Assembly (NCBI GenBank): GCA_002269645.1
Contig: NIVC01000419.1
Coordinates: forward strand, 248,001 to 312,000
Length of the DNA: 64,000 nucleotides
Origin: Macrostomum lignano
Lineage: Eukaryota
Reading direction: 5' to 3'
Below the pieces are notes generated by a model. That model saw nothing but the letters and a program-made list of their open reading frames with translations. It made no database searches and had not been told where the DNA came from. Both the position numbers and the translations under genes were made by a program. Positions 1 to 63,435 of this stretch are shown piece by piece. Numbering within the stretch: the first letter of the stretch is position 1; each line of letters starts with the position of its first letter.

Positions 1-3000
1 AGAGTCGTGCATTACGTAGGGCTTGTCCGTGCGCAGTCGGTCGTTGGTACCGCGAATCATGAGCTCCTGATGATCGACGTTTAATAGAAACACCTTGTGC
101 GGCACAATGCCGTGCTGGGTGAGCAGCTTCACCTGGCGCATGCTGCATGGAAATCCATCGAATACGTAGCCCCGAACGGAGGTTCGCGTGTCCATCAGGA
201 CGGTCTCGACAGCGCGCACGACCAGCTCCTCGGGCGCCACGCCTCCAGCCAGCAGGTGCCTATTAATCTCCTTGGCCAGTGAGGTCTTTCGCTGCTCCTG
301 CAGTACTCGACGAAGAGCGTCTCCCGCACTGAGCCGGACGAGGCCGAGGTCCTTGGCAAATCGGCTGGCCAGGGCGGTCTTGCCGGACTTCGGCGGGCCC
401 AGAACGGCCACTCTAATCGGGACCACCACCCGCGGGTGCTTGGCGCTGCTGTCCAGGTAGCGACGCGGGTCGGCGGCGAAGGAGTCGCGCCTGGCCGCGC
501 TGGACATGAAGTAGACGAAGCTCTGATAGACGGCCGGGAAAGTCGGATGCGCCTCGTCGGCGAGAGGCAGAACGCAGTCGCCGTCGTACAGAGCGACTGG
601 GCACCAGCGGCCGAAGCTGCTGAGGTGCTTGTAGCCGGTGGTGAGCAGACGGGCGGCTGTCTTTTCCGATACCGGGTAAACTCGCTCGAAGATGCTGCGC
701 CGGTTCTCAATAAGGTAGCGCAGGCTCTTGGTGATGTAGTGGCGCACAATGTGCGGCTTCTTGCCCGACTCGACTACGAAACGCGGAATCAGCATCTCCT
801 CCAGCACATCCTTGACAGCGTCCAGCGAGTTCAGATCGCCGTCGTACACATCGTTGATGTCGTTCTTCAGCCGATCGATGGCGTCCTCTTCAGGCTCCTC
901 GTCCTCGTCCTCCATCTCCTCCTCCTCCTCAAACTCCTCAGCCAGGATCGCTTCGATGTCGTTGGCCTCCTCTTCCTCCTCCTCTTCTTCTTCTTCCTCT
1001 TCGTCGCCCTCCTCGATTTCACCGTCCTCGATGCGTTGCTGCCGTTCCGCTTTGCGCTGCTCCTGGCGCTCATTGCGAGCCTCCTCGTTCTCCTTCAGCA
1101 GCTCCTTGCGTCGCTTCTCCATCGCTTCTTGGCGCTTCTTCTGCGACTTCTCCTTGTTACGCTGCTTGATGTCGTTCTTCTGCTTTCGACGCTCGCGCCA
1201 TTTCTCCAGCTTAGGCGGCAGCATCCGGGCGATGATCTCCTGGTCGCCCGTGTTCAACACGATCGCTCCATCGACGAATAGGCCGGCCTCGGCGAGGAAT
1301 TGCGCCTCCTCGGCGTCCTGGGAAGCCTTCGAGCACGAATCCGATGTTCTTGAACGGTTCGCGCGCCAGAACTGCGTCAGCAGAGTCTCCAAGGACTCAG
1401 TAGTCAGCGGATCCTGCTTCTCAATGTTGTTCTTCACGTTCTCCTCCAGATCCGAGTAAGAGATTTCCTCCTCCTCGTCCGGCTCCTCCGGCGACTTCTC
1501 CGATGGCTCTTCAACCTCGACCGGCTCACCGTCGGTCCGTCACGGACGTCTCAGGCAGGTCGGGCAGCTCCTCAGGCAACTCCTCCAGCTGCTCCTCGTG
1601 ATCCGGGCCGATCCGCTTGCGCGTTTTCGGCAGCACAACTTCTTGCAGCCGGTCGCGGAAGGAGATGTGAAACAGGCCAAGTCGGCGGGCCAGCTGCTTT
1701 CCGTGCAGAGTTTTGCCCGAGCCTTTCGGACCGAGGATCAGCAGGCGAAGAGGCGGCGGCTTCAACGGCGTGTCAGTTGGCAGGAAGAGCTCTGGCTGTT
1801 CGAGGAACTTGTCTCTAGCTTCGTTGGACGCGAAATAATAGACCTTGCCGCGATACTTGGCGGCGATCTCCGGGTTGCCAGGCCACATCACCTGGATTAG
1901 GGAATTGAGGAGGTGAAAGTGTGGGTGATGGCCCCAGATTCGAGCGTTAAAAATTGGGTGTCAAAAGGACGTCTTTTCGTCAGTTTCTTGGAAACACTCA
2001 AACAACTCACCTGATTGTCGTGTAGGCTGACTGGACAGAAGAAGCTGGACTCGCCCAGCTGTTTGTTCTTGCCCCGGTTGGGATCTTCTTCCTCCTCGGC
2101 GCCGCCCTCCTCCTCTTCCTCGGCTTCTGCTCTTCCGCCTTGGCCGCCTCGTTGTCCTCCTCCTCCTCCTCGATGTCCTGGCCGGTGAGCTCCCAGGCCT
2201 GATAGCGGAACGGCTTCTCCATGGTGGCAATAATTTCGTTGACAATGTCCTCCTCTGTGCGATCGTTGATCACCACCTCGGTGGGGTCGATGCGGTGTTA
2301 CTCTGCACCGCCGTGACTATGCGCGCGAACTCGGACTCGAACTCCTTGCGCTTGGCTCTGGCCGCGTCAATTTCCGACCGGGCGGCGGCAGCGGCTGGTC
2401 TAGCGGATCCTCCGGAGCTTCAGCAGCGTCGTCAGCGTCGGCGTTCCCAGCGCCGGCATCTTCAGGCTCGACGGAGGACGCAGGCGGCTCCTGGAATTTC
2501 ACCTCGGGCTGGCGGGTTGGCCGCTTCTCTTCTTCCTCCTCGTCATCGTTCTCTTCTTCCTCTTCTTCCTCGCCTTCCTCCTCGGCAGTTTTCTTGGCTT
2601 TGCCATCGCCCTCGCCTTCGCCTCTTCGCCTCATCGCCCTCGCCGGCTTCTTTGGCCAGCCGCTCGGCCTCGAGCGCCAGGCGCTCCTGCTCGGCGCGCT
2701 CTTCTTCCAGTTTGCGCAGCGCCTCCTCCTCGCGACGGCGCTTCTCCTCGGCCTCCCGATCCAGCGCTCCTGGACGCTGGCGCGCACCGAGTCGCGTTGC
2801 GCTGGTACCAGCGGCGCAGCAGGTACTCGCCGCCGTCGCTTGAGTCGCGCAGGATCACCAACTCGTCGGGAAGAAAGCCCTTCTCTTGGCCCTTCTCGAG
2901 CACGGCGTTCCAGACGTCGCGATTCAACGGGAAATTGTCGATCACCCAGCCGCCGGCTAGGGTCCCTGGTCGTTCGGAGCCGACTGGCGCTGCTCGCGTT

Positions 3001-6000
3001 CCACCTGCGGCGGTGTGACAGAGCGAATTTTCTATAGTTTCTTTTCTGAGCCTGCCTACGCATCCCTGTAATTAAGTACTTAGAGTAACTAACCAACCAG
3101 CCAAGCAGCTAAGCAAACAGACAACAGGCAAACTCCAACCTGACGAATGGCATCCTCCAGAACTTCTACGTAAACCTCTGCATCCAGTGTAGCCTTCGCA
3201 CTAGCCGCCTCCTTCACTTTGGCCTCAACTATGGCCACCACTTCCGGATGCTGGGCGTCCACTTCTGGCAGAGGCTCGTCCTGCTCTTCTTCCTCGCCGC
3301 CCTCGACTGCGCCAACATCGGCGGCGGCGGTGTTTGTCCGTCGGGCTCCGGAGCTGCCGTGGCCTCCTCTTCCTCCTTCTTCGCCTCCTCGCTTCGCCAT
3401 CTTCCTCGCCCTCTCCGTCGCCCTCGCCTTCGCCTTCCTCCTCGCCTTCGGCTTCGCCACCTTTGGCCGCTTCGGCTGCCCGTCGGGCCTCCTCAGCTTC
3501 CTGTGGCCCTCTCCGCCGCTTGCTTGGCCGCCGCGCCGCCTCGCGCAGTTTGGCGCGACAATCTCTATGGCCAGAGCCGTAGCCTCTGAGCGAACTTTCT
3601 CCAGTCGAAGCCGAATCTGCTGCTCGATCCGCGGCAGCATCAGCGTTCGAAGTCGATCACCTTGGCGTTGTACCGTTCGGCTAAGAGGAGTGCCGTAGAC
3701 GTTTTGCCCGAATGTGGCGGTCCAGAAACGACCACCTTGACCGGAGGACGCGGCTGCGGCGGCCAGCAAGTACGGTCGGGGTTTTTAGTGAACTTGGCCA
3801 AAGCTTCGAGAGACGAGAGGCAATAAATCTTGTTGAGGAAGCTGCAGCAGAACTCCGGCTTGCCGGGTACCAGGGAGCCTTCGTACAGGGCCACCGGGCA
3901 ATAGCGGAGCCACCTGCTGCGCTGCCAGCGATACCTGTAAGTGCGGTTATGGTGGCTCATTGGTTTGCTTCCTGGGTGGTTGGTCCTCTTTTAGCTCGTA
4001 GTCACAAAATTTCATTGGGTTCGTATCTAGTCATAGGACAACTAGCTTAACTTCCTGAGCTTCCTACATACCTCGTAGTCACGAAGGTCTGACAGTTTCG
4101 CTCTTGGTCCTAGAAGTTTACTATAGCTTCCTAACTTTTCACAGTGTAGTAAACTATAGATACGAGTATGTTCACAAGCTTCCAACCATAATTCTATGGG
4201 TTTCATTCACCTTGGTGCTGGCATCTTCTTGGGCCCCAGCATGCGCATGAGCTCCTCGGTGTCCATGTCCTCAGGCGGCTGGTCCTCCTCGTTGCCAGCC
4301 TCAAACAGGCGCATCGGCGTCACCGCCGGTTGAACGCCGAGGCTCTGCAGCTTCAACTGGACCTGCCGGAAGATGTCTGACGGCAGCAGAGTTGCGTTGA
4401 GCTCGATAACGCATTGTTGATCGTGATCGGACATCAGGTCCTCTACCAGGCGTTGGCACCGCGCCACGTAGTCGTTAATGCCGGCCGTCACCGACTGCGG
4501 CATGTCCTCGGGCCGACGTAGCAGTCGCTGGATCACTTCCGGTGCCAGAAGCGGGAAGTCCGCGCTGCCTGGCAGTTCCAGCTCCTCTTCCTCTTCGAGC
4601 TCCTCTTCTTCTTCCTCTTCCTCATCGTCGTCTGCGTCCGGCTCAGGTTTCTCCTCTTTAGGCTGCTTCTCCGGCTTGTCCGGGTCGTAAAACTCCTTGC
4701 CATAGAGGGCGCCGTCCTCGAAGTCGATCCGGACGGTGACTCGTCGCGATTGAAGATCCTCGTTAGTCAGCTTCAGGTGCAGGATGTAGTCGGGCGACAG
4801 GGACATTGATTTGAGCAGATCCAGCTGCTTCTGCATCGGCATGAAGCTGTCGTTTGAGCAGGGTAGGCCATCCAGGACATAGCCATGATGCTGCACCTCT
4901 GGTGACTTCAGTTTGTCCAATAGCAGCTGAGTTGGCGAAAGAAATTGAAAAATGCAACATTAATTAAAGTAGATACATTAGCTGTAGTAAACTAACTGTG
5001 AAACTGGCGAAACTGCCTCCTTGTGAATTTTTCTCCATAATTATTTAAAAAGCAAAAAATTGTACCACATTGAATGATCAGTGACCAAATACAATACAAA
5101 TGCAGTGAAAATAAAACGACAATTTTATCAACGCATTGTAGAAAATTTCTGTTCATGTAAATTACCAGCTTTCGTTAATGTCCGCCTGAATGCTTAAGCA
5201 AAATTCATAGAAAATAAATTCAGATTAGTATTGTTGAATTACATTTATTTTGCTGTAGACTAACTTAGTTCAAAAGTACAGAATATTTACCTTTTAGAAA
5301 AGCAAAATATAATAAAATATCAACAGGCATCAGAAATTAGTACCATATTTTTGTTTACTTTTTCAAGAAATAAAAGAGAAACATGAAATGTCACAATACT
5401 ATTTTGATATTATCGGATTTTCGTCTGATAATTCAAGTCCATCTCTTTGTGTGCTATAAATTTATGAATACCGATTCCAAGGAACAATGCTATACGATAT
5501 TGATATATCCAGCCCTACTATTACTTCTATTATTAAAGTTTAAGGTCCATTAAATCAGTTGAGATAATATTTTTGTCAATTTTAGGTAAATATCAAAGCC
5601 CAACAAGAAAAAGAAGCCTCTGTGCTGACTGTGCACCATTTCAACTGCAAAAAAAATTATTTTCTGTCTATAGCTCTATGCCAAATGCAAGTGTATATTA
5701 AACTGATGGAAAATTTTAAAACTAAAACTAAATACTATGTCTTTAACCTTCTGTAAAACACCTGGTAAAGTAAAGAGCTGAAGTACATGCTTAAAAATTT
5801 TTATGGAAGTTATTACACATTTGCAACCTCTAGTCTACTAACTTTAATAACTATATTTTACTGTGATTTATGCTCTACAAATTTCTACAAACAAAAGCAA
5901 AAAATATATGCATATATATTCAACACTGAAAAATTCTTACATTAAAAACAACTTCATCGCTCAAAATCTCGCCTGCTTCCAGCTTTTTTCGAAGTTCTTC

Positions 6001-7753: not shown

Positions 7754-10700
7754 ATGCTGCAACTCAGCTGTCAGATTCATCAAAGCACGCCGCCTATTAA
7801 GATTCTGCCCGAAAGCATGCGCTCTGAAGAATCGGCAAAAAACAACAGCGTTCCCGAGCTGACGCGCCTCAATGCCGACTCATCCTTGCCGGCCAAGCCA
7901 GTGCCTCAGCCTTCTGCCAACATTCGGCAGCTGTTCTGCAGCAGCAGCAGCCTGCGCGGTGTGCCAAAGATCTGTCGAGCTGACACAACTTTCCTTCGAA
8001 TACTCTGGCTAGTCTTTGTCCTGGCCATGTTCATCCTGTTAGTGTACTCGTCCACTAGGGTGCTGATGAACTATCGAGAGTACGACGTGTCAGTGCAGAC
8101 GTCAGTCATAGGCAATGATCCCAGCGACTTTCCCGCCATCACAATCTGCAGTCATTATCCGTTCTCGCCTAGGGCGGCTAGAATGTGGCAGCAGTGCGAT
8201 GGACAACTGGCACCAGCGACTTTCAACCGGCGGTTGAGACAACTGACCAGACAGTTGTTGTTCAGCGGCAACCTGCGACTGGCCAACACGCTGCTGTTTT
8301 ATGATAAGGTTCGGTTTTGGATGAAGGGTGGCCTGTCGCAGATTTTACGCTCAGATATGACTTTTTCGGAACGATTGGTAGTGTTTTTCAATGTTCTGTG
8401 ACTGCTTCACAACGATTGGTAGTGTTTTTCAATGTTCTGTGACTGCTTCACAACGATTGGTAGTGTTTTTCAATGTTCTGTGACTGCTTCACAACGATTG
8501 GTAGTGTTTTTCAATGTTCTGTGACTGCTTCACAACGATTGGTAGTGTTTTTCAATGTTCTGTGACTGCTTCACAACGATTGGTAGTGTTTAAAGAAGTG
8601 TTTGTTCTCGATAGCTATTGCAGAATGACAATAGGACTTACCATAAGGCGAGAAAAAAGTTTTAGTTTAAAAAAGCTACCAATCAAACATTTTCGGCATG
8701 AGGGCGAGTGTTTATAGAGGATAGAGAGAGATCGAGAGCATTTTGGCAAGAGCTCGGACTGTCTGCGGACATACAGATATAGTTGTGTTACAATACAACC
8801 GAGACAGTTTTGTACACAGTAGAACGCATCTGTAGAATTAACAAATTTATCGGCTAAAATCTCTGTTTCATATCTTGTGAATTGATGAGTTTTCGACGCT
8901 ACCAAACTTTTTTATGCTTAAAGAAGAGATTCTAGACTGCATGGATGCCTCTCAATTGTAGAGCTCAAGGAGCCGAAAGTAATATTGAAAAAGAACAAAT
9001 TTTCATACCGACTTGTTTAATTTTTAATGCCAACTGGAGCCCCTCCCCCTGAGGCAACTGCTACCCAGGAAACTACTTGTCTTGTCTCGGTTTTCAACCA
9101 CCAGCAAAACCTTTTCTTCAATTGAAATAATCAGCACTACCTTGATTTATTATTTGTGTCGGAAAGTCTCTAAAAAGACACTGCATGACCTGGTGGAACC
9201 CCAGACAGCAATATGCCTTCGGCATATTTTAAATAAATAGGAGCTTAGCTGGAGTATATTTATATATATTTTTTCATTTTCGCAGGTGAACACGTATTAT
9301 CAGAATCTGGACCCAAACGTGACCGTGTCCATGGGTCACAGTGTGGACGAGTTCCTCCTTCACTGCATGATCGCCATCGGCAACTATGTGATGGTTGGCA
9401 AAGCCAGCGAATGCCAACTAACCTTTCAGCTGGTCTCGCACCCGAAGTACTTCAACTGCTACACGGTTAAGCCGACGCAGGCGGACAAGTCGCAAGCAAT
9501 GTCGGCTGTGTATCTCATTGTGAATCTGGGTTCGAACTCGCGACAGCACCCCTGGGAGCAGGCCTTCGTGATGGACGTGTTCGACCAGGCCTACGGGCTG
9601 CGCCTGCTGCTGCACGAGGCGAACCTCTATCCCGGTATTGAGAATGCCGGAGTGCATATTGAGCCAGGTGAATCCGATGGAAGAGCCTCATAGAGGCTTC
9701 GAAGACTGACGTAAGATCCCCATTCTTTCTCCGAAGTATTGAAGTCACGAAGCTTTGGACGCGTTCTCATTCCATTTAATTCCCATAGGATTTAGTTTTA
9801 GTGGGTGTCTGCTTGGCTGTCTTATCTACGAGTATATCAATGCGTCTAGCTGCGTCCATCAAATACGCATAAAACCGAATGGCTGGATGTACAGAGCGAC
9901 AAAAAGTTTCCAGTCTACAAAATAAGCTCATAGCTAACTATGTCCTTGGTTGAGAAAACCTTCACACCGATTTAGGGTGCTGTTAAAGAGCTGAATTATG
10001 CACAGGCAGCATAAATTGAATTTAACTGACCCTACCGTATTTTTAGAAACCCCAATCCAGACGAATTCGTGAAATTGAGAATTGATCGAATTTGCACTTT
10101 AATCTGAAATCAATATCGCACTTGATATTTGATCGAGTACGAACTGAGTCTGTGGTCTCTTTGACTTAGAAGACTTTTGGCACTTTTAGACTCTACATAC
10201 ATTTACATACACCGTGCCTGGAGTTAAAAGTAGCCTGAAAATGATGAGAAAAAGCATGAGAAGTAGCCTGAGAATGATGAGAAAGAGCATGAGAAGGAGC
10301 CTGAAAAGGAACCTGAAAAGGAACCTGAAAAGGAGCATGAGAAGGAGCATGAGAAGGAGCATGAGAAGGAGCATGAGAAGGAGCATGAGAAGGAGCCTGA
10401 GAAGGAGCATGAGAAGGAGCATGAGAAGTAGCCTGAGAATGATGAGAAAGAGCATGAGAAGGAGCCTGAAAAGGAACCTGAAAAGGAGCATGAGAAGGAG
10501 CATGAGAAGGAGCATGAGAAGGAGCATGAGAAGGAGCATGAGAAGGAGCATGAGAAGGAGCATGAGAAGGAGCCTGAGAAGGAGCCTGAGAAGGAGCCTG
10601 AGAAGGAGCCTGAGAAGGAGCCTGAGAAGGAGCCTGAGAAGGAGCCTGAGAAGGAGCCTGAGAAGGAGCCTGAGAAGGAGCCTGAGAAGGAGCCTGAGAA

Positions 10701-13700
10701 GGAGCCTGAGAAGGAACCTGAGAAGGAGCCTGGGAAGGAGCCTGGGAAGGAGCCTGAGAAGGAGCATGAGAAGGAGCATGAGAAGGAGCCTGAAAAGGAA
10801 CCTGAGAAGGAGCCTGAGAAGGAGCCTGAGAAGGAGCCTGAGAAGGAGCCTGAGAAGGAACCTGAGAAGGAGCCTGGGAAGGAGCCTGAGAAGGAGCCTG
10901 AGAAGGAGCATGAGAAGGAGCATGAGAAGGAGCATGAGAAGGAGCATGAGAAGGAGCCTGAGAAGGAGCATGAGAAGGAGCCTGAGAAGGAGCATGAGAA
11001 GGAGCCTGAGAAGGAGATTAGACTATTAGACTTCTAATACTATTAGAGGAACAAAAACTATGAGCGCAGTTTTTTTGACACAGCCTTTGAGCAAGACTTT
11101 TCCGCTCGGAATCAGCTAGCAACCCACTGCCCTAAAGATACCCTAAGACCGTTTCTTCGGGCTAATCTCGCTTTCATGCAAATTACAATTGTATTTGAAT
11201 TTTCTCCATTCTAAAACTAAATGTAGATCACACGTGGAGAGCAATGAGAATTTAGCCAAGGACATATTTTAAGACATTCCAACCGAAAATCTTGTATCAC
11301 ACCGAGATCACACATGGCTCTCTCTAAAAAGAACCAAGAAACTCCACATGAACCTCTCGTAAGATTGTGAGATCCCACACGAATCTCTGATAGATTTTGA
11401 GATCCCACAATGATCTCTCATAGGATTGTGAGATCCCACACGAATCTCTCATAGAATTGTGAGATCCCACACGAATCTCTCATAGAATTTTGAGATCCTA
11501 CACAAATCTCTCATAGGATTTTGAGATCCCACACGAATCTCTCATAGGATTGTGAGATCCTACACAAATCTCTCATAGGATTTTGAGATCCCACACGAAT
11601 CTCTCATAGGATTGTGAGATCCTACACAAATCTCTCATAGGATTTTGAGATCCCACACGAATCTCTCATAGGATTTTGAGATCCCACACGAATCTCTCAT
11701 AGGATTGTGAGATCCTACACAAATCTCTCATAGGATTTTGAGATCCCAAATTAATCTCTCATAGGATTGTGAGATCCTACACGAACCTCACAAATGACAA
11801 TAAGATCCCACAGAGAACAGTTGGATTCTACAATCAAACTGGACAATTGTAAGTCCTCAATCAGGAAATCTGAAAGCTATAAATAATAAGCAGAGGGTAT
11901 TTTGCACAATACTGAAGCACAGTGATGGCTAACTGAAGCATCTAGAGCTGTCAGAAGGCTCTCCCATAAATATCCCATTCCAAAAATTGATGCAGACTGC
12001 ACTGCCGATTTTGCATTCAATTTACTTAATTGGCCTTTCTGCGTCAGACCCCCGTGCCACTGCCACTCCTCAATCAAACCTTGATTGAGGTTTCAGCTTC
12101 AAGCAATTAAGGAGTAAGTAAATTGTAATGATATTGCAATTGCTAGTTTTTCATATGGCTGCCTGCAAAATGAGCCGTTGTTTGATCGAAAATTTCTACG
12201 GATATTAAACACAAAATACTACCTTCCTTCATGCGAATTTCCCAATTAGAAATCCCATAGCTACAGAAATCCATAGCTACAGAAATCCCACAGTTACAGA
12301 AATCCATAGTGTTGTGTATTGCAAAGGCATGCGAGGCGTAGGGGTAGTTCGGGGACAGCGTTTCTAGAAACTTCCACCGCGGACTTGTTTACGCATAGTT
12401 CCAGAAGTTTCCTTCCCCGGTCTTTCTAGAACTTTCCTTCCCCGCGTGCATAAATATACGAGCCGCCCTCCTATTGGCCAGTCCCTTCTTTGGTGCCACT
12501 GAGCGCCCGGATAATTATCTATCTTGTTTCTGCGTTCGTTAATTCAACAACAGAACATTGGCGACGAGGATGGGATAGCATCCCTGCACCCACGCCCTTC
12601 CTGGCGAACTGCGGATCACCGACAGTACCATGGAGCCGATGGATTGAGGCCTTTGAATTTTATTACGAGGCGGCCCAATTCAAGGAGCCCGAAGGGAAGG
12701 AAGAGGCGAAACCGCTGAAGAGGAGCCTTCTGCTCCATCTGCTTGGATTCGAAGGTCAGCGGGTTGCTCGAGCACGCCAAGCAATCAAGGAGAACGACAC
12801 GTTCGCAGCAACTAAGGCGGAGCTCGAGAAGATCTTCGGCGAGAAGCCCAACGTGATGGTAGCCAGATATCGCTTCCGCCAGCGCCAGCAGCTACCCGGC
12901 GAGGACGTCAAGACCTTCGTGGCAGCCCTGAGGGAGCTGACGGAGCTGTGCAACTACGGCGCGATACAGGACGATCTCATCAGAGACCAGCTGGCTGAGA
13001 AGACCAGTAACCCCAGAATCCGAGAGAGGCTGCTGACGGAGAAGGTGGAGGACCTCAACCTGGCGAAAGCGCTCAGCATCGCGGTCTCCATCGAGGAAGC
13101 CTCCAAAGAAGCCAAGGCGATGGCGCCATCAACCTCGAGCACGGCAGCCGTCCAATCGATCCGACAGCCGAGGGGCCAGAAGGTCGCTGCAAAGGGGAGG
13201 CACCGCCCAGCACCAGCTGGCAGGACGGCCAAACCCGGCGGCGCCTGCACGCGCTGTGGGCGAGACCACGGACCGACGACCCCCTGTCCGGCCAAGGGCA
13301 AGACATGCGACGCTGTGGCAAGAAGAACCACTTCCGGAGTTGCTGTCGCAGCCAGCAGGCTGCTGTCAATGCCGCGGACGAGGTGATCACAGTCTACGCA
13401 GTGCCGGGTGGCGACAGGGAGGTCCGGGCGACGCTGGAACTCGGACCGGACAGGACCGCTGTCAGCCTGATGGTGGACTGCGGCGCAAGGGTGTCGCTGC
13501 TGTCCGACAGACCGCCGACCGGATCTCAGGCGCAGTCACCTCTCCCACCACGACGAAGCTGCGTGCCTACGGCGGACTGCCGATCCAGCTAAGTGGTGTC
13601 ACCGAGCTGGAGGTGCGCTACGGCGACAAGGCGATGCAGCACCGGTTCTTCGTTGCGCCAGGCGGCGACAACATCGTCGGTAGAGACCTGATGGAGAAGC

Positions 13701-16700
13701 TGGGCTTCCGAGTCGACCTTAGCGGGCAGCCGCCCGGAATCGCGGAGGTCAGCGACTTGACGGCGGACTTGCAGGCGCGGTACCCAACGACCTTCAGCGG
13801 TGCGATAGGATGCTGCGCCGGCGCTGTACACCAGCCCAAGGTCGACCCAGCAGTGCGACCCGTCCAGCAGCCACTCCGCCGCCTGCCCCTCATGCGACAG
13901 GAGCAGGTCGGTGCCGAACTCGACAAGATGGAGAAGGACGGCATCATCGAGCGAGTCAACGCTAGCGAGTGGGTCTCCAATCTAGTGGTGACGGCGAAGA
14001 AGGATGGCAGCATCCGAATCTGCGTCGACGTTCGCGAGCCGAACAAGCACTGATCGTCGACAAGCACCCGATGCCACAGCTGGACGAGATTGCCTCGAAG
14101 ATCAAGAAAGGCCGCGGCCGAGTGTTCAGCAAGATTGATCTGAAGTCGGGCTACATGCAGATGCAGCTGCATGAATCGAGCCGCAATCTGACAGCCTTCA
14201 TCACGCACAAGGGGCTCTTCCGCTATCGTCGAGTTCCCTTCGGCCTGGCATCGGCACCAGCTGCTTTCCAGCGCATGCTCGACGATCAGGCCGCCGACCT
14301 CGACGGAGTGGAGCACATCCTGGATGACTTCATCGTGTACGGGCGCAGCGAGGAGGAGCATGATCGACGACTGGAGAAGTTGCTCCAGCGCCTCGAGGAC
14401 AAGGGCATGACGGTGAACAAGCAGAAGTGCGCCTTCAAGCAGAAAGAGGTCGAATTCTTCGGATTCGTGATCTCGGAGGCCGGCATCCGGCCAACGGAGT
14501 CAGCCACAGCGGCCATCAGGGACATCCGGCAGCCCGGAGATCAGAAGGCGTTGAAGTCATTCCTAGGCGCCGCTAACTTCCTGATGCGCTTCGTGCCGCA
14601 CTACGCCGACATCACAGAGCCGCTTCGAAGGCTCCTGAAGGCCGACTCCAACTTCGACTGGACGCCGGAGTGCCAACGGGCGTTCGAAGCAGTGAAGGAC
14701 GCCATCAGCAAGGCACCGACGCTCGCCCACTTCGACCCGAAGGCCGACACTATTGTCACCACGGATGCCAGCGCCAAGGCCATCGGAGCCCAGATGTCGC
14801 AGATCCAGGACGGCGTCGAGCGACCGGTCGCCTTCGCCGCCCGAGCGCTGACGACGACGGAACAGCGCTACGCCGCGAACGAGCGCGAGGCACTGGCTAG
14901 CCTCTGGGCGATGGAGAAGTGGCATTTCTACCTCTACGGTCGCCACTTCGAGCTGCGCACAGATCATCAGGCGCTGCAGCAGCTACTTCTCGGACCGACC
15001 GGCACGGGACACCGGCCACTGCGGATCCATAGGTGGTGCGACCGGCTGCTGCAGTACGACTTCCATGTGCGCTACCTGCCAGGAAACAGCAACTACGTGG
15101 CCGATCTGCTGTCCCGGTGGAGCAGCGGATCGGAGCTGAACCTGATCCACCTGCCCGACACTCCAGGCCCGAGAGTCAAGGCGGTCACACTGGAAGCACT
15201 TACCGCAGGGACCTCGGCTGACGAGACACTGGGGACAGCCATCAGGAGCGTCATCAGCGGCCGGTGGCCAGCTGACATCGACGACGTTGAGCTGCGGGCT
15301 CTCTGGAAGGTGCGCGAACAGCTCAGCGTCTGGAACAACGGCAAATGCCTCGCCTTCCAGGAGAGAGCAGTCATCCCGGAGTCTCTCCGCGGCCATCTTC
15401 TCGAGCAGGCTCACGAAGGGCACCAGGGCATCGTGCGCACCAAGCAGGCGCTCCGCGACTCAGTCTGGTGGCCCGCCATGGACAAGGCGGTCGAGACCTT
15501 CGTGCGACACTGCGTAGCGTGCGAGACAGCCGAGAAGAACTTTAAGGTCAGTCCGGCCCCGCTCAAGACCATACGCTGGCCAGATTCACCATGGGCAGAG
15601 ATCGCCGTGGACATCGTCGGAGAACTGCAGGCGGCGCCGGCCTCTAGCAGGTACCTCATCGTCGTGACCGACCTGCACAGCAAGTGGCCGGAGGTCATCC
15701 CGACGGCCAGCATCACCACGGAGACCATCTGCCGTGCGATGCGCAGCCTGTTCGCAAGGTGGGGGCTGTGCGAGAAGGTGCTGACGGACAACGGCCCGCA
15801 GTTTGGCAGCGAGTTCTCGGACTTCTTGGCCGAGCAGGGCATCCGGCACGTCAAGACCAGCCTCTACCATCCGCAAACCAACGGCCAGACGGAGCGTCTC
15901 AATCGGTCGCTACTCGCCAGCATCAGAGCGGCCATGGTGGAGAACAGGCCGTTTCAAGACGCCGTGACCAACTTCTTGAGGCCTACCGGAGCTCCAAGCA
16001 CAGCCTGACGGGCAAGTCACCGGCCGAGCTCATGCTGGGTCGGAAGTGGCGCACCGCGATCACCATGCTGTCTCCCGGAGGGGGAATGACAACGACCGAG
16101 GCGACGCCTCAGGCACTGCGGCGGCAAATAGAGGCGCGGCAGCAGCGGATCAAGGCCTACACCGATGCCAGGCGAAGGGCCCGCCCCGAGACGTTCCACC
16201 CCGGCGAGTGGGTGAGAATCCGACGGCCCACCAAGAAGGGCAAGCTGGGTACCCGCCTCTCACGGCCACTACAAGTGCTCCATCAGGCGGGACACCACGC
16301 GGTCGAGCTCAGCGACGGCACCAGATGGAACCAGCAGCGGCTGATCCGAACACCGCACCCGGCGCAGCCGAGAGAGCGGTTCGACCCACTGGTGGACTCG
16401 GCGCCAACGACCGGAGCCGGCACGGCGGCACCGGCGGCACCGGCGGCGGAGCCTCCGGCAAGAACAGCAGCGCCCCGCCGATCTGAGCGAGCCAGGCACC
16501 CGCCGATACGCTTCATGAACTGCCGCTGGGACTGATTAAAGTGAAGCTTGGGGACTGTTGGACTCCTTGAAGGAGGGGAAGAATGTTGTGTATTGCAAAG
16601 GCATGCGAGGCGTAGGGGTAGTTCGGGGACAGCGTTTCTAGAAACTTCCACCGCGGACTTGTTTACGCATAGTTCCAGAAGTTTCCTTCCCCGGTCTTTC

Positions 16701-19700
16701 TAGAACTTTCCTTCCCCGCGTGCATAAATATACGAGCCGCCCTCCTATTGGCCAGTCCCCTTCTTTGGTGCCACTGAGCGCCCGGATAATTATCTATCTT
16801 GTTTCTGCGTTCGTTAATTCAACAACAGAACACATAGCTACAGAAATCCCATAGCTACAGAAATCCTATATCTACAGAAATCCATAGCTACAGAAATCCC
16901 ACAGCTACAGAAATCCTATATCTACAGAAATCCATAGCTACAGAAATCCCATAGCTACAGAAATCCCACAGCTATAGAAATCCCATAGCTTCAGAAATCC
17001 CACAGTTACAGAAATCCATAGCTACAGAAATCCCATAGCTACAGAAATCCATAGCTACAGAAATCCCACAGCTACAGAAATCCCACAGCTACAGAAATCC
17101 CACAGTTACAGAAATCCCATAGCTACAGAAATCCCATAGCTACAGAAATCCCACAGCTATAGAAATCCCATAGCTACAGAAATCCCACAGTTACAGAAAT
17201 CCATAGCTACAGAAATCCCATAGCTACAGAAATCCTATATCTACAGAAATCCATAGCTACAGAAATCCCATAGCTACAGAAATCCTATATCTACAGAAAT
17301 CCATAGCTACAGAAATCCCATAGCTACAGAAATCCTATATCTACAGAAATCCATAGCTACAGAAATCCCATAGCTACAGAAATCCTATATCTACAGAAAT
17401 CCATAGCTACAGAAATCCCACAGCTACAGAAATCTCACAGCTATAGAAATCCCATAGCTACAGAAATCCCACAGTTACAGAAATCCATAGCTACAGAAAT
17501 CCCACAGTTACAGAAATCCATAGCTACAGAAATCCCACAGCTACAGAAATCCCACAGTTACAGAAATCCATAGCTACAGAAATCCCACAGTTACAGCAAT
17601 CCCAAAGCTACAGAAATCCCACAGCTACAGAAATCCCACAGCTAATGAAATCTCAAACCATTCCAGGCAAAATGGTGGAAATCGCATTCGACACGGTGCT
17701 GTGGAAGGAGACCCAAGACTCACCAATGGACCGTTGCCATGACGGGTGGAGACCAGCTATCGAGGACCTGCAAAATCGATACCGTTATTCCTACCAGGCG
17801 TGCAAGGAGGCCCACATGAACAAACTGTTCATTGCCAAGTGCCAATGCCTGTTGTCAAGGTTTCCCCGTCCGGCAGGGCTGCCCAGCAACCAGATACCTT
17901 ACTGCGGAGACTTTCGCACTAGCAATATCTCCATCATTGAGAGGTGAGCGCCGGTTGCTTTAGGCTGAATACAAGAGGTTTCTTTAAAACTGTTTCAATT
18001 ATGGGCAGCTATGGTGAAAAGGAGGTTGCACTCGTGATTGCCAATTTTAGTCGCTATCCTATCCATGTAAAAATCGGTCGAATAATATTCTGACTAAAAA
18101 TGTCTCCAGAAAAAAACTGGTATTTAGTATCTGTGGTGCGTGCCATCTGTGGTGTGTGCCAGCGTACAGTGGGAGAGTCAGCTGAATAAACAGAATGTGT
18201 ACTTGAAAATGACCGTCGTAGGTTAGAGCTGTCTACTTACAGAACTGAGGTACGTTAGAGCTGTCTACTTACAGAACTGATGTAGGTTAGAGCTGTCTAC
18301 TTACAGAACTGATGTAGGTTAGAGCTGTCTACTTACAGAACTGATGTAGGTTAGAGCTGTCTACTTACAGAACTGATGTAGGTTAGAGCTGTCTACTTAC
18401 AGAACCGATGTAGGTTAGAGCTGTCTACTTACAGAACCAATGTAGGTTAGAGCTGTCTACTTACAGAACCGATGTAGGTTAGAGCTGTCTACTTACAGAA
18501 CCGATGTAGGTTAGAGCTGTCTACTTACAGAACCGATGTAGGTTAGAGCTGTCTACTTACAGAACCGATGTAGGTTAGAGCTGTCTACTTACAGAACCGA
18601 TGTAGGTTAGAGCTGTCTACTTACAGAACCGTCGTAGGTTAGAGCTGTCTACTTACAGAACCGATGTAGGTTAGAGCTGTCTACTTACAGAACCGATGTA
18701 GGTTAGAGCTGTCTACTTACAGAACCGATGTAGGTTAGAGCTGTCTACTTACAGAACCGATGTAGGTTAGAGCTGTCTACTTACAGAACCGTCGTAGGTT
18801 AGAGCTGTCTACTTACAGAACCGATGTAGGTTAGAGCTGTCTACTTACAGAACCGATGTAGGTTAGAGCTGTCTACTTACAGAACCGATGTAGGTTAGAG
18901 CTGTCTACTTACAGAACCGATGTAGGTTAGAGCTGTCTACTTACAGAACCGATGTAGGTTAGAGCTGTCTACTTACAGAACCGTCGTAGGTTAGAGCTGT
19001 CTACTTACAGAACCGATGTAGGTTAGAGCTGTCTACTTACAGAACCGTCGTAGGTTAGAGCTGTCTACTTACAGAACTGAGGTAGGTTAGAGCTGACTAC
19101 TTACAGAACTGAGGTAGGTTAGAGCTGTCTACTTACAGAACTGAGGTAGGTTAGAGCTGTCTACTTACAGAACCGATGTAGGTTAGAGCTGTCTACTTAC
19201 AGAACTGAGGTAGGTTAGAGCTGTCTACTTACAGAACCGATGTAGGTTAAAACTGTCTACTTACAGAACCGATGTAGGTTAGAACTGACTACTTACAGAA
19301 CCGATGTAGGTTAGAGCTGTCTACTTACAGAACTGAGGTAGGTTAGAGCTGTCTACTTACAGAACCGATGTAGGTTAAAACTGTCTACTTACAGAACCGA
19401 TGTAGGTTAGAACTGACTACTTACAGAACCGATGTAGGTTAGAGCTGTCTACTTACAGAACCGATGTAGGTTAGGGCTGTCTACTTACAGAACCGATGTA
19501 GGTTAGAGCTGTCTACTTACAGAACTGAAGTAGGTTAGAGCTGTCTACTTACAGAACCGATGTAGGTTAGAGCTGTCTACTTACAGAACCGATGTAGGTT
19601 AGAGCTGTCTACTTACAGAACCGATGTAGGTTAGAGCTGTCTACTTACAGAACCGTCGTAGGTTAGAGCTGTCTACTTACAGAACCGATGTAGGTTAGAG

Positions 19701-22102
19701 CTGTCTACTTACAGAACTGAGGTAGGTTAGAGCTGTCTACTTACAGAACCGATGTAGGTTAAAACTGTCTACTTACAGAACCGATGTAGGTTAGAACTGA
19801 CTACTTACAGAACCGATGTAGGTTAGAGCTGTCTACTTACAGAACTGAGGTAGGTTAGAGCTGTCTACTTACAGAACCGATGTAGGTTAAAACTGTCTAC
19901 TTACAGAACCGATGTAGGTTAGAACTGACTACTTACAGAACCGATGTAGGTTAGAGCTGTCTACTTACAGAACCGATGTAGGTTAGGGCTGTCTACTTAC
20001 AGAACCGATGTAGGTTAGAGCTGTCTACTTACAGAACTGAAGTAGGTTAGAGCTGTCTACTTACAGAACCGATGTAGGTTAGAGCTGTCTACTTACAGAA
20101 CCGATGTAGGTTAGAGCTGTCTACTTACAGAACCGATGTAGGTTAGAGCTGTCTACTTACAGAACCGTCGTAGGTTAGAGCTGTCTACTTACAGAACCGA
20201 TGTAGGTTAGAGCTGTCTACTTACAGAACCGTCGTAGGTTAGAGCTGTCTACTTACAGAACCGATGTAGGTTAGAGCTGTCTACTTACAGAACCGTCGTA
20301 GGTTAGAGCTGTCTACTTACAGAACTGAGGTAGGTTAGAGCTGACTACTTACAGAACTGAGGTAGGTTAGAGCTGTCTACTTACAGAACCGATGTAGGTT
20401 AGAGCTGTCTACTTACAGAACTGAGGTAGGTTAGAGCTGTCTACTTACAGAACCGATGTAGGTTAAAACTGTCTACTTACAGAACCGATGTAGGTTAGAA
20501 CTGACTACTTACAGAACCGATGTAGGTTAGAGCTGTCTACTTACAGAACTGAGGTAGGTTAGAGCTGTCTACTTACAGAACCGATGTAGGTTAAAACTGT
20601 CTACTTACAGAACCGATGTAGGTTAGAACTGACTACTTACAGAACCGATGTAGGTTAGAGCTGTCTACTTACAGAACCGATGTAGGTTAGGGCTGTCTAC
20701 TTACAGAACCGATGTAGGTTAGAGCTGTCTACTTACAGAACTGAAGTAGGTTAGAGCTGTCTACTTACAGAACCGATGTAGGTTAGAGCTGTCTACTTAC
20801 AGAACCGATGTAGGTTAGAGCTGTCTACTTACAGAACCGATGTAGGTTAGAGCTGTCTACTTACAGAACCGATGTAGGTTAGAACTGTCTACTTACAGAA
20901 CTGATGTAGGGTAGAGCTGTCTACTTACAGAACCGATGTAGGTTAGAACTGTCTACTTACAGAACCGATGTAAGTTAGAACTGTCTACTTACAGAACTGA
21001 TGTAGGTTAGAGCTGTCTACCTACAGAACTGAGGTAGGTTAGAGCTGTCTACTTACAGAACCGATGTAGGTTAGAACTGTCTACTTACAGAACTGATGTA
21101 GGGTAGAGCTGTCTACTTACAGAACCGATGTAGGTTAGAACTGTCTACTTACAGAACCGATGTAGGTTAGAACTGTCTACTTACAGAACTGATGTAGGGT
21201 AGAGCTGTCTACTTACAGAACCGATGTAGGTTAGAACTGTCTACTTACAGAACCGATGTAGGTTAGAACTGTCTACTTACAGAACCGATGTAGGTTAGAA
21301 CTGTCTACTTACAGAACTGATGTAGGTTAGAGCTGTCTACTTACAGAACTGATGTAGGTTAGAGCTGTCTACCTACAGAACTGAGGTAGGTTAGAGCTGT
21401 CTACTTCAAGTACTTAGAGAACTTTGCTTTAGTTGAATAGTCTACTTACAGTACGATAGCAGTGCTAAGCAGTATAAAATAAAGCAACACGTAAAATTTA
21501 AATTTCTGTTTTCAAGCCGTTTGCGCTGTCTGGAAGAGATTGGCGAGCACCAGTCCAAGATGCCGCAGCCAGCAGCAGCAGCAGCAGCAGCAGCAGTAGC
21601 AGACGATTCCCAATGTCGCAAGCGCTGCACTCGGTACAGCTATGATCAGGAGCTGTCAATCACCCGCTGGCGGGCCAGCAGCTACCAACTGCACTGGATG
21701 CTGCATCAGTCCGACAGTTGGAAACGGCTACGCGAGGTCAACAACGAGTCGGAGAAGCGACACCTGTTGCGCAATATTCTCGACTACCTGGGAGCGGACA
21801 ACTTGACCCGCCTGCCGGTCTCGTACCAGCAGCAGGAGCGGCAGCAGCAGGCAACTCTCACCGACTCAGCCGAGGACACCTACGCCTACGTGGTAGTTCG
21901 GCGAAAAAGTTTCGACACATTGAAACGAGAAGAGAAGCTCACGGTCACGTTCGAAGCTTTGATGAGTCGTGTTGGCGGCCTGTGCTCGCTGTATCTGGGG
22001 CTCACCATGGCCTTCTTTGTGGAGATTGTCGAGTTCCTCTACTTGGCCTGCCTGCGACAGCGGGTGAGGGGCCGGGAGCGGGCGGTCGATCGGCCGGCTT
22101 AA
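7754..22102 (+). CDS. DEG/ENaC (amiloride-sensitive sodium channel family) subunit, 4 exons
   Basis: Exons 7754-8308, 9286-9667, 17667-17943 and 21517-22102 join with consistent phases 0, 1, 2. Motifs: pre-TM1 SSLRGVPKI, TM1, FPAITIC, HPKYFNCYT, GLRLLLHEANLYP..GVHIEPG, Cys-rich YSYQAC..CQC..YC..CRKRC, TM2 LMSRVGGLCSLYLGLT..VEIVEF. Confidence 0.9.
8370..8590. repeat. 41-bp minisatellite, ~5.4 copies (ENaC intron 1)
   Basis: Unit AACGATTGGTAGTGTTTTTCAATGTTCTGTGACTGCTTCAC recurs at 8370, 8411, 8452 and onward. Confidence 0.95.
10231..11016. repeat. 12-bp minisatellite (ATGAGAAGGAGC/CTGAGAAGGAGC), ENaC intron 2
   Basis: Direct tandem units over ~790 bp; explains the low-complexity ORFs 10186-10995 and 10214-11029. 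Confidence 0.95.
11368..11790. repeat. 31-bp minisatellite, ENaC intron 2
   Basis: Unit GAGATCCCACACGAATCTCTCATAGGATTGT, about 13 copies. Confidence 0.9.
12310..12557 (+). repeat. 5' LTR (248 bp)
   Basis: TGTTGTGTATT...CAGAACA; matches the 3' LTR except one C in a C-run (GTCCC vs GTCCCC) as read by eye. Confidence 0.97.
12361..12458 (+). promoter_or_regulatory. Three perfect heat-shock elements plus TATA-like box in 5' LTR U3
   Basis: tTTCtaGAAacTTCc 12361-12375, gTTCcaGAAgtTTCc 12398-12412, tTTCtaGAActTTCc 12423-12437, then ATAAATATA 12450-12458. HSE consensus is alternating nGAAn pentamers. Confidence 0.8.
12559..12576 (+). promoter_or_regulatory. Primer binding site complementary to the tRNA-Ser(GCU) 3' end
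   Basis: TGGCGACGAGGATGGGAT, 1 nt after the LTR; reverse complement ATCCCATCCTCGTCGCCA is the 3' end of eukaryotic tRNA-Ser(GCU) as I recall it. Confidence 0.85.
12570..16535 (+). CDS. Gag-Pol polyprotein of the LTR element (Gag, zinc knuckles, aspartic protease, RT, RNase H, integrase), split by ~5 single-base frameshifts
   Basis: Gag ARYRFRQRQQLPGE..LIRDQL; CTRCGRDH..CPAKG..CGKKNHFRSCC; protease LMVDCGA; RT FSKIDLKSGY..VPFGLASAPAAFQ..ILDD; RNase H TTDASAKAIGA; integrase HEGHQG..CVAC, TDNGPQF, HPQTNGQTERLN. Frames switch near 12573, 13308, 13506, 14048 and 15982. Confidence 0.9.
16569..16583 (+). other. Polypurine tract
   Basis: GAAGGAGGGGAAGAA directly abutting the TG of the 3' LTR. Confidence 0.9.
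16584..16832 (+). repeat. 3' LTR (249 bp), also with 3 HSEs (16635-16711) and TATA-like box
   Basis: Copy of the 5' LTR, followed by TSD CATAG. Confidence 0.97.
16833..17643. repeat. 16/17-bp minisatellite (ATCCCATAGCTACAGAA); left remnant at ~12253-12309
   Basis: The same unit flanks both sides of the LTR element, so the element inserted into this array. Confidence 0.95.
18212..21406. repeat. 32-bp satellite, ~100 copies, filling ENaC intron 3
   Basis: Unit GTAGGTTAGAGCTGTCTACTTACAGAACCGAT; rare variants recur at 512 and 704 bp spacing (16 and 22 units). Confidence 0.97.
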
Positions 22103-25296: not shown

Positions 25297-25714
25297 AACC
25301 CTAACCAAACCACAACCCTAACCAAACAACAACCCTAACCAAACAACAACCCTAACCAAACAACAACCCTAACCAAACCACAACCCTAACCAAACCACAA
25401 CCCTAACGAAACCACAAACCTAACCAGACCACAACCCTAACCAGACCACAACCCTAACGAAACCACAACCCTACCAAACCACAACCCTAACCAAACCACA
25501 ACCCTAACCAGACCACAACCCTAACGAAACCACAACCCTACCAAACCACAACCCTAACCAGACCACAACCCTAACCAAACCACAACCCTAACCAGACCAC
25601 AACCCTAACCAAACCACAACCCTAACCAAACAACAACCCTAACCAAACCACAACCCTAACCAGACCACAACCCTAACGAAACCACAACCCTAACCAAACC
25701 ACACCCTAACCAAA
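25297..25714. repeat. 17-bp telomere-like minisatellite, ~24 copies
   Basis: Unit AACCCTAACCAAACCAC; contains AACCCTAACC, i.e. GGTTAGGGTT on the minus strand. Confidence 0.92.
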
Positions 25715-25762
25715 CGACAATTTTCACCTGCACAGACCACAAAGAGTCGCTCAGCTGCTCTG

Positions 25763-39850: not shown

Positions 39851-55311
<15,461 letters not shown>

Positions 55312-60800: not shown

Positions 60801-60895
60801 GGTGACAATCAAAGCTAGAGATTACAATCACAGCTAGAGGTGACAATCAAAGCTAGAGATTACAATCACAGCTAGAGGTGACAATCACAGCTAGA
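57820..60895. repeat. 19-bp satellite, ~160 copies
   Basis: Units ACACAGCTAGAGATTACAA and TCACAGCTAGAGGTGACAA. Confidence 0.96.
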
Positions 60896-63299: not shown

Positions 63300-63435
63300 G
63301 TTAGTAGTGCAATATTGATTGATATTTGATACAATTAGCAACTGCACTACCATGAGCATTCTGATTGCATCCGTCAAATAGCTCGTACTTTAGGCTGTAA
63401 TTCATGCATGGACTTACAATCTATACTCAGTAGGT

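What the first reader, a model, noticed from the sequence alone, without database searches (positions are those of the whole stretch)
12361..12458. LTR promoter built like an hsp70 promoter: three perfect heat-shock elements directly upstream of the TATA-like box
Seen: TTCtaGAAacTTC, TTCcaGAAgtTTC and TTCtaGAActTTC within 77 bp, the last ending about 12 bp before ATAAATATA; the same set is in the 3' LTR (16635-16711). Established: HSF1 trimers bind three alternating nGAAn units, and the plant Copia element ONSEN is heat-activated through LTR HSEs. Inference: an animal Ty3/Gypsy family that has acquired HSF control and mobilises under heat or proteotoxic stress. Three perfect 9-position matches in a 248-bp LTR are very unlikely by chance. 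I cannot check whether this family is already described.
Basis: partly seen in the sequence, partly recalled or inferred. Interest (0 to 1): 0.88.

Follow-up and report, generated by a model that had tools for sequence, protein, structure and literature searches.

The report
Known heat-activated flatworm LTR retrotransposon
This is a copy of a Ty3/gypsy retrotransposon of the flatworm Macrostomum lignano whose promoter carries three perfect heat-shock elements; the motifs are real and far beyond chance, but this family was already published in 2024-2025 as strongly heat-induced through exactly these elements.

Summary
Each 248/249-bp LTR of a 4.5-kb Ty3/gypsy element (12310-16832, + strand) carries three perfect TTCnnGAAnnTTC heat-shock elements (HSEs). 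They lie just upstream of a TATA-like box. There are no others in the 64-kb window, where about 0.9 would be expected by chance.

The window is Macrostomum lignano assembly Mlig_3_7, contig NIVC01000419.1, positions 248001-312000. Ustyantsev et al. (bioRxiv Dec 2024; Mobile DNA Dec 2025) mined this same assembly. They reported a single Mag-clade family with HSEs, Mlig-id115, with 19 copies and three HSEs per LTR, all of the form nTTCnaGAAnnTTCc. All three HSEs here fit that form. They showed more than 250-fold induction at 37 °C, and that mutating the HSEs abolishes heat induction of an LTR reporter.

Direct HSF binding and heat-driven transposition remain unshown.

Points specific to this copy:
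- The LTRs are near-identical, so the insertion is recent.
- It has a 5-bp target duplication inside a 17-bp minisatellite.
- It sits in an intron of a DEG/ENaC channel gene, on the same strand.
- Five single-base frame breaks may be long-read assembly errors.

The parts
12305..12309 (+). Left copy of the target-site duplication, CATAG. It lies inside a 16/17-bp minisatellite (CATAGCTACAGAAATCC).
   Evidence: Flanks read directly. The array continues at 16833-17652.
12310..12557 (+). 5' LTR, 248 bp, with TGTTGT...AGAACA termini.
   Evidence: Pairwise alignment with the 3' LTR shows one 1-bp indel and no substitutions. BLAST against the window finds no further copy.
12362..12374 (+). HSE1, tTTCtaGAAacTTCc. 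Centre at about -112 from the inferred start site.
   Evidence: It fits the published form nTTCnaGAAnnTTCc.
12399..12411 (+). HSE2, gTTCcaGAAgtTTCc. Centre at about -75. First unit of a 25-bp tandem duplication.
12424..12436 (+). HSE3, tTTCtaGAActTTCc. Centre at about -50. It ends 13 bp before the TATA-like box.
12450..12458 (+). TATA-like box, ATAAATATA.
   Evidence: Sequence read directly. Its function is inferred.
12478..12483 (+). Initiator-like CCAGTC. The A at 12480 lies 30 bp after the start of the TATA-like box and is the inferred transcription start (U3/R boundary).
   Evidence: Sequence read directly. This is inference only and was not mapped.
12559..12576 (+). Primer-binding site TGGCGACGAGGATGGGAT, 1 nt after the LTR. 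It is complementary to a tRNA-Ser-type 3' end (recalled from memory). The gag ATG (12570-12572) lies inside it.
   Evidence: Sequence read directly. A related element in L002 has the same LTR-end/TGGCGAC.AGGATGG layout, with its gag ATG in the PBS.
12574..13311 (+). gag (window frame 1): a PNMA-like capsid region and the first zinc knuckle. It is out of frame by +1 with the ATG at 12570.
   Evidence: Weak Pfam PNMA match. tblastn with 15 gag homologues. Frame detail.
13290..13592 (+). Second CCHC knuckle and protease N-terminal part with DCGA (frame 0). The frame break at about 13300 looks like a 1-bp deletion in CDA[C]GKKNHFRSCC.
   Evidence: The homologue P0001 is continuous across this break.
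13523..14047 (+). Protease C-terminal part and start of reverse transcriptase (frame 2). There are frame breaks at about 13490-13523 and about 14044.
   Evidence: The L001 product is continuous across 14044.
14044..15981 (+). Reverse transcriptase, RNase H, integrase zinc finger and integrase core (frame 1).
   Evidence: Pfam RVT_1, RT_RNaseH_2, Integrase_H2C2 and rve. tblastn with more than 100 homologues.
15969..16535 (+). Integrase C-terminal part (frame 0). The frame break at about 15975 looks like a 1-bp deletion, TTG[G]AG.
   Evidence: P0016 and many other homologues are continuous across it.
16569..16583 (+). Polypurine tract GAAGGAGGGGAAGAA, abutting the 3' LTR.
   Evidence: Sequence read directly.
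16584..16832 (+). 3' LTR, 249 bp, with the same three HSEs (16636-16648, 16673-16685, 16698-16710) and TATA-like box (16724-16732).
16833..16837 (+). Right copy of the target-site duplication, CATAG.

Best explanation
This is a young, full-length copy of the heat-shock-element-bearing Mag-clade Ty3/Mdg4 (gypsy) retrotransposon family of Macrostomum lignano. [quoted passage not shown]

Proposed mechanism: the U3 region of the LTR is organised like a heat-shock gene promoter. Three trimeric HSEs are centred about 112, 75 and 50 bp upstream of an inferred start site, followed by a TATA-like box at -30. On heat stress, activated heat-shock factor trimers are presumed to bind these sites and drive a burst of genomic RNA from the 5' LTR. 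That RNA serves as gag-pol mRNA and as template for reverse transcription, primed at a tRNA-Ser-type primer-binding site.

What is shown here: the motifs and their significance, the element's anatomy, and the host and assembly. What is shown in the literature: strong heat induction of the family, and the requirement for the HSEs in an isolated LTR reporter. What is inferred: HSF binding, the exact start site, and any link between heat and actual transposition.
For: Motifs:
- Six perfect three-unit HSEs occur only in the two LTRs, against 0.87 expected per 64 kb.
- Their spacing to the TATA-like box and Inr-like site is typical of heat-shock promoters.

Element anatomy:
- It has TG..CA LTRs, a 5-bp target duplication, a primer-binding site, a polypurine tract, and gag-PR-RT-RH-IN domains.

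Host and assembly:
- The Mon2 exon in the window is 100% identical to M. lignano PAA83451.1.
- Window 29851-64000 is 100% identical to GCA_002269645.1 contig NIVC01000419.1.

Literature on that same assembly:
- Only one Mag family has HSEs. It has three per LTR, and all have the form nTTCnaGAAnnTTCc, which all three HSEs here fit.
- The four strongly induced HSE families had log2FC of about 8, and Mlig-id115 was the top one. Induction appeared within 5-15 min at 37 °C.
- Mutating the HSEs abolished induction of the LTR reporter.

Controls:
- Related Mag-like elements without the adaptation lack HSEs: L004 from M. lignano and L005 from another assembly. The motif cluster is therefore family-specific, as the paper says.
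Against: - I could not align this copy with the published consensus or the cloned LTR, because the paper's supplementary files are not held. The family assignment rests on assembly, clade-level features, HSE number and HSE form.
- Mag-clade placement was not tested by phylogeny here.
- The authors did not show HSF binding. They also note that two one-HSE Copia families were not induced, so HSE presence alone is not sufficient.
- This copy has five single-base frame disruptions as assembled. If these are real, it cannot make its own proteins.
Confidence: 0.9

Rival explanations
1. It is an HSE-bearing M. lignano Mag lineage that is related to, but distinct from, the published Mlig-id115 family. 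It could be one of the small lineages filtered out for having fewer than four copies. In that case it would be an undescribed member of the same kind.
For: The preprint counted 12 lineages with HSEs, and 3 of 221 Mag lineages. [quoted passage not shown] No direct sequence comparison was possible.
Against: The final paper merges the Mag HSE lineages into one family with three HSEs. The stated form of all its HSEs (nTTCnaGAAnnTTCc) fits all three sites here, including the less expected trailing c. The assembly is the same.
Confidence: 0.08
2. The HSE-like motifs are a by-product of a local tandem duplication, or bind some other factor, and do not confer heat control on this LTR.
For: HSE2 and HSE3 lie in a 25-bp tandem duplication, and HSE1 aligns to the same unit. 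The paper found one-HSE Copia families that were not induced.
Against: Each unit is a perfect three-unit HSE with the 2-bp spacing specific to HSF sites, not the 3-bp spacing of STAT-type sites. The cluster is placed at -50 to -112 from a TATA/Inr pair. Mutagenesis of the three-HSE Mag LTR from this genome abolished heat induction.
Confidence: 0.02

Closest known systems
Mlig-id115|Mag (Mlig_LTR-RT_ID206|Mag), the heat-activated Ty3/Mdg4 family of Macrostomum lignano (Ustyantsev et al., Mob DNA 2025, PMC12801592; bioRxiv 10.1101/2024.12.18.629116)
   Same: Same genome assembly (Mlig_3_7). Ty3/gypsy with PR-RT-RH-IN order. Three canonical HSEs per LTR upstream of a predicted TATA box. Every HSE has the form nTTCnaGAAnnTTCc.
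   Different: No difference was found. Identity to the published consensus could not be checked directly because the supplementary sequences are not held.
ONSEN / ATCOPIA78 of Arabidopsis and other Brassicaceae
   Same: An LTR retrotransposon whose LTR carries a cluster of HSEs and is transcribed on heat stress.
   Different: It belongs to the Ty1/Copia superfamily, which by established knowledge has integrase before reverse transcriptase, and its host is a plant. HSF (HsfA2) binding and heat-triggered transposition are demonstrated for ONSEN but not for the flatworm family. The two are convergent, not homologous.
Helitron1_CE of Caenorhabditis elegans
   Same: An animal transposable element that carries HSEs and is heat-induced in an HSF-1-dependent way (as cited).
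   Different: It is a rolling-circle DNA transposon, not an LTR retroelement, and has no LTR promoter.
Heat-shock gene promoters (Drosophila hsp70 type; M. lignano Hsp20 promoter used in transgenesis)
   Same: Several trimeric nGAAn/nTTCn arrays lie within about 120 bp upstream of a TATA box. The proximal site is about 50 bp from the start site. (The architecture is recalled from established knowledge.)
   Different: Here it drives a retroelement genome rather than a chaperone gene. No sequence similarity to a host hsp promoter was tested, so capture versus de novo origin is open. The 25-bp duplication suggests local amplification of one unit.

Membership tests
Mlig-id115|Mag family of M. lignano (PMC12801592) | [quoted passage not shown] | tested here: met
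   Mon2 exon 100% identical to PAA83451.1. Window 29851-64000 is 100% identical to NIVC01000419.1.
Mlig-id115|Mag family of M. lignano (PMC12801592) | Three canonical HSEs in each LTR | tested here: met
   The paper reports three HSEs for this family.
Mlig-id115|Mag family of M. lignano (PMC12801592) | All HSEs of the form nTTCnaGAAnnTTCc | tested here: met
   tTTCtaGAAacTTCc, gTTCcaGAAgtTTCc and tTTCtaGAActTTCc, compared with the Methods of the paper.
Mlig-id115|Mag family of M. lignano (PMC12801592) | At least 80% nucleotide identity over at least 80% of the length to the family consensus (the paper's family rule) | not testable with these tools
   Supplementary sequences are not held. No sibling copy could be retrieved: protein searches, metagenome scans and the window itself all gave none.
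Mlig-id115|Mag family of M. lignano (PMC12801592) | Mag-clade placement in a reverse-transcriptase phylogeny | not tested
   No GyDB reference set was available. Indirect support only: PR-RT-RH-IN order, and a canonical CCHC second knuckle in gag (CX2CX4HX4C once the 1-bp gap is allowed for) plus a near-canonical first one. The closest relatives are 'K02A2.6-like' / gypsy-integrase-like proteins of fish, echinoderms and M. lignano at about 45%.
Mlig-id115|Mag family of M. lignano (PMC12801592) | Strong heat induction that depends on the HSEs | not testable with these tools
   Reported for the family by RNA-seq, qPCR and a mutated-HSE reporter. It was not measured for this copy.
LTR retrotransposon, Ty3/gypsy (Metaviridae) type | Paired LTRs with TG..CA ends, target-site duplication, primer-binding site and polypurine tract | tested here: met
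   The PBS-tRNA match is recalled from memory only; no tRNA gene lies in the window.
LTR retrotransposon, Ty3/gypsy (Metaviridae) type | pol domain order protease - RT - RNase H - integrase | tested here: met
   Pfam hits in order along 13969-16008. Homologue tblastn map.
Canonical heat-shock element / heat-shock promoter | At least three contiguous inverted nGAAn units with 2-bp spacing | tested here: met
   Three separate perfect TTCnnGAAnnTTC sites per LTR.
Canonical heat-shock element / heat-shock promoter | Occupancy by heat-shock factor on stress | not testable with these tools
   This needs ChIP, EMSA or HSF knock-down. The published work also did not show it.
ONSEN (Ty1/Copia, Oryco cluster) | Copia-type pol order (integrase before RT) and plant host | tested here: not met
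   Integrase is C-terminal to RT/RNase H and the host is a flatworm. The element works like ONSEN but is not a member.

The most novel reading that the evidence does not exclude
This insertion sits in the intron between exons 2 and 3 of a DEG/ENaC (amiloride-sensitive channel) gene, on the same strand. Its 3' LTR, with an intact three-HSE promoter, lies about 0.9 kb upstream of exon 3, separated only by a 17-bp minisatellite. On heat stress the 3' LTR could therefore fire into the host gene and the satellite. That would produce heat-inducible N-terminally truncated channel transcripts or satellite RNA, which would be a concrete case of a stress-responsive LTR rewiring a host gene in an animal. 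The published study looked only for solo LTRs within 2 kb of up-regulated genes.
Probability: 0.15. Interest if true: 0.45.

Novelty: already known. Interest (0 to 1): 0.22.

Why it matters
HSE-bearing LTR retrotransposons show how a mobile element can plug into a universal stress pathway, so that it is transcribed exactly when host control is weakened. That was long known only for the plant element ONSEN. The flatworm case is the first experimentally supported animal LTR example, and it is convergent with the plant one. Because it was published in 2024-2025 from this very assembly, the present finding adds no new principle. Its value is as a clean blind rediscovery and as an annotated, very young intronic copy. 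That copy could be used to ask whether heat also drives transposition or host-gene read-through.

Tried and rejected
- **Sibling LTRs in the window.** BLAST of the LTR and the whole element found only the two LTRs themselves.
- **Sibling or orthologous copies in public collections.** The gag and integrase protein searches gave best hits of only 52% and 69% identity, on short Logan contigs without U3. A first pol search timed out. A metagenome scan for the double-HSE pattern found nothing. A protein-guided metagenome scan found only relatives at 36-50%.
- **HSEs in more distant Mag-like elements.** L004 (M. lignano, 213-bp LTRs) and L005 (132-bp LTRs) have none.
- **Host identification.** The k-mer-based protein search missed the M. 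lignano Mon2. For a while this wrongly suggested a different species. The exhaustive HMMER search plus cluster look-up resolved it.
- **Direct comparison with the published LTR.** No supplementary files are held. The 2020 note is not held. Full-text searches for the HSE strings and for 'Mlig-id115' gave nothing beyond the paper. A search for the Logan run prefix was uninformative.
- **RNA genes.** Rfam and tRNA scans of the window found nothing. The bacterial promoter scan is irrelevant here.
- **Other readings of the motifs.** STAT-type sites were rejected because they need TTCnnnGAA spacing. Chance was rejected on the statistics.

Full report
**Observation.**
- Three perfect TTCnnGAAnnTTC motifs lie at 12362-12374, 12399-12411 and 12424-12436.
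- The last ends 13 bp before ATAAATATA (12450-12458).
- The identical set recurs at 16636-16710.
- A whole-window scan on both strands finds only these six sites. Dinucleotide-preserving shuffles give 0.87 per 64 kb, and none of 100 shuffles reaches six.
- That is about 0.003 expected per 248-bp LTR, so the cluster is not chance.
- The three sites are related. HSE2 and HSE3 sit in a 25-bp tandem duplication, and HSE1 aligns with the same unit. The cluster probably grew by local duplication of one HSE-bearing unit.

**The element.** The motifs lie in the LTRs of a 4,523-bp LTR retrotransposon on the + strand.
- The 5' LTR is 12310-12557 and the 3' LTR is 16584-16832. They differ by a single C in a C-run and by no substitution.
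- The ends are TG...CA.
- A 5-bp target duplication (CATAG) flanks the element inside a 16/17-bp minisatellite.
- One base after the 5' LTR comes TGGCGACGAGGATGGGAT, a primer-binding site. From memory, it matches the 3' end of a tRNA-Ser.
- A polypurine tract (16569-16583) abuts the 3' LTR.
- Pfam finds RT, RNase H, integrase zinc finger and integrase core, in that order, plus a weak PNMA-type gag match. This is a Ty3/gypsy architecture.
- The element is GC-rich (0.62) against 0.45 for the rest of the window.
- An initiator-like CCAGTC places a plausible start at 12480, 30 bp after the start of the TATA-like box. The HSE centres then fall at about -112, -75 and -50. This is the layout of a heat-shock gene promoter. 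The start site is inferred, not mapped.

**Coding state of this copy.** Mapping more than 130 homologous proteins onto the element shows frame changes where the homologues are continuous.
- Changes occur at about 13300 (inside the second CCHC knuckle), 13490-13523 (protease), 14044 (start of RT) and 15975 (integrase).
- At three of them the local sequence reads as a single missing base. At 14044 and 15975 the missing base is one G of a GG pair. The break in the protease could not be resolved to a base.
- The gag ATG lies inside the primer-binding site, as in a related element, and is off by one base (a GGG run).
- So there are five single-base frame breaks and one LTR indel, but no LTR substitution.
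- That pattern looks more like consensus errors of a long-read assembly than like mutational decay. This is an inference.
- As assembled, gag and pol are broken at the places listed.

**Host and source.** Other parts of the window encode host exons:
- a DEG/ENaC channel;
- the C-terminal region of Mon2;
- rhodopsin-type receptors.

The word-indexed protein search failed to find a close Mon2. The exhaustive HMMER search found a 1,697-residue protein 100% identical to the exon. The cluster look-up names it PAA83451.1, BOX15_Mlig014339g3, from Macrostomum lignano. Its locus on GCA_002269645.1 contig NIVC01000419.1 is 100% identical to window 29851-64000. The window is therefore NIVC01000419.1:248001-312000 of assembly Mlig_3_7.

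**What is already known.** A full-text search found Ustyantsev et al. (Mobile DNA, Dec 2025, PMC12801592; preprint Dec 2024). They mined LTR retrotransposons from exactly this assembly.
- Canonical HSEs occurred in six of 137 family consensuses.
- Among 78 Mag-clade families, only one had them: Mlig-id115, with 19 copies and three HSEs per LTR.
- The four strongly induced HSE families had log2 fold change of about 8 after 2 h at 37 °C, and Mlig-id115 was the top one.
- The response appeared within 5-15 min.
- The isolated LTR drove a fluorescent reporter after heat in embryos and adults.
- Changing 'all original HSEs nTTCnaGAAnnTTCc' abolished the response.

All three HSEs here have exactly that form, including the trailing c. 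The element here matches on five counts:
- genome assembly;
- Ty3/gypsy architecture;
- relatives of Mag type;
- HSE number;
- HSE form.

I therefore identify it as a copy of that family with about 0.9 confidence. I could not align it with the published consensus, because the supplementary files are not held.

**Controls.** Two more distant Mag-like elements with identical LTR pairs have no HSE. One is from M. lignano (L004) and one from another assembly (L005). This agrees with the paper's view that HSEs were acquired by particular families. No sibling copy could be fetched from any collection available to me. Conservation of the HSEs among the 19 copies therefore rests on the paper's majority-rule consensus.

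**Mechanism and its limits.** The best-supported reading has these steps:
- Heat activates HSF, which trimerises and binds the three HSEs.
- Transcription then starts about 30 bp after the TATA-like box.
- The transcript serves as gag-pol mRNA and as the template for reverse transcription.

The requirement for the HSEs and the magnitude of induction are shown in the literature. HSF binding is not shown. No one has shown that heat produces new insertions. The near-identical LTRs of this copy show only that the family transposed recently.

**Context worth noting.** The element lies in an intron of the DEG/ENaC gene, on the same strand.
- Exons matching Pfam ASC profile positions 1-87, 144-253, 270-337 and 356-455 lie at 7754-8401, 9325-9690, 17720-17911 and 21521-22102.
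- The 3' LTR is therefore about 0.9 kb upstream of exon 3.
- Heat-driven read-out from it into the satellite and the host gene is possible but untested.

**Verdict.** The finding is already known.

Noticed in passing
window 7754-8401, 9325-9690, 17720-17911, 21521-22102 (+): A DEG/ENaC (Pfam ASC) channel gene spans the retrotransposon. The element sits in the intron between the second and third detectable exons, on the same strand, and its 3' LTR is about 0.9 kb upstream of exon 3.
   Followed up: partly
window 21255-22620 and 22620-23985: A 1,366-bp segment that includes the last DEG/ENaC exon is tandemly duplicated at 100% identity, next to 29-bp and 32-bp arrays. It is either a very recent duplication or an assembly artefact.
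   Followed up: partly
window 12573, ~13300, 13490-13523, ~14044, ~15975, and 12473/16747: Every frame break in the element, and the only LTR difference, is a single-base indel, mostly in short homopolymers. There is no LTR substitution. This suggests consensus errors in the long-read Mlig_3_7 assembly rather than decay.
   Followed up: partly
window 12559-12576: The gag start codon (ATG 12570) lies inside the primer-binding site. A related element from a Logan contig (L002, ATG at 145-147) has the same arrangement, so the leader is almost nil.
   Followed up: partly
whole window, e.g. 10245-11016, 18218-21406, 37409-38397, 42522-43894, 50621-52179, 57812-60900: There is an extraordinary density of unrelated minisatellite arrays (periods 12-52 bp; 48 TRF rows), mostly inside introns of the Mon2 and DEG/ENaC genes.
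   Followed up: no
window 25297-25720: An interstitial 17-bp array, AACCCTAACCAAACCAC, contains a telomere-like AACCCT (TTAGGG) core.
   Followed up: no
window 57004-57129; L004 6240-6337, 8880-8967, 9180-9299: A repeat of about 100 bp is shared at about 82% identity with three sites on another M. lignano contig. In both places it lies next to tandem arrays, so it may be a small mobile element that carries or seeds minisatellites.
   Followed up: no
window 39851-40867, 43909-44697, 46883-47413 (-) and 62313-63329 (+): The Mon2 gene (54 kb, 1,697 aa, annotated as BOX15_Mlig014339g3) has a Srw-type GPCR gene nested antisense in one intron. The protein cluster holds three near-identical Mon2 gene copies (g1-g3) on different contigs, in line with the redundancy or hidden tetraploidy of the assembly.
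   Followed up: partly
window 1-4920 (-): A GC-rich (about 0.6) stretch has long ORFs with charged low-complexity sequence and a weak adenylate-kinase match (4207-4920). It is probably a host gene and not a second retroelement.
   Followed up: no
L001, L002, L003 (Logan runs SRR31628392, SRR31628437, SRR31628403): One sequencing project holds a Mon2 at 75-80% identity to M. lignano and a related Mag element (gag 52%, integrase 69%). It is presumably another macrostomid. Its LTR U3 is not covered, so whether the HSEs are older than M. lignano is open.
   Followed up: partly
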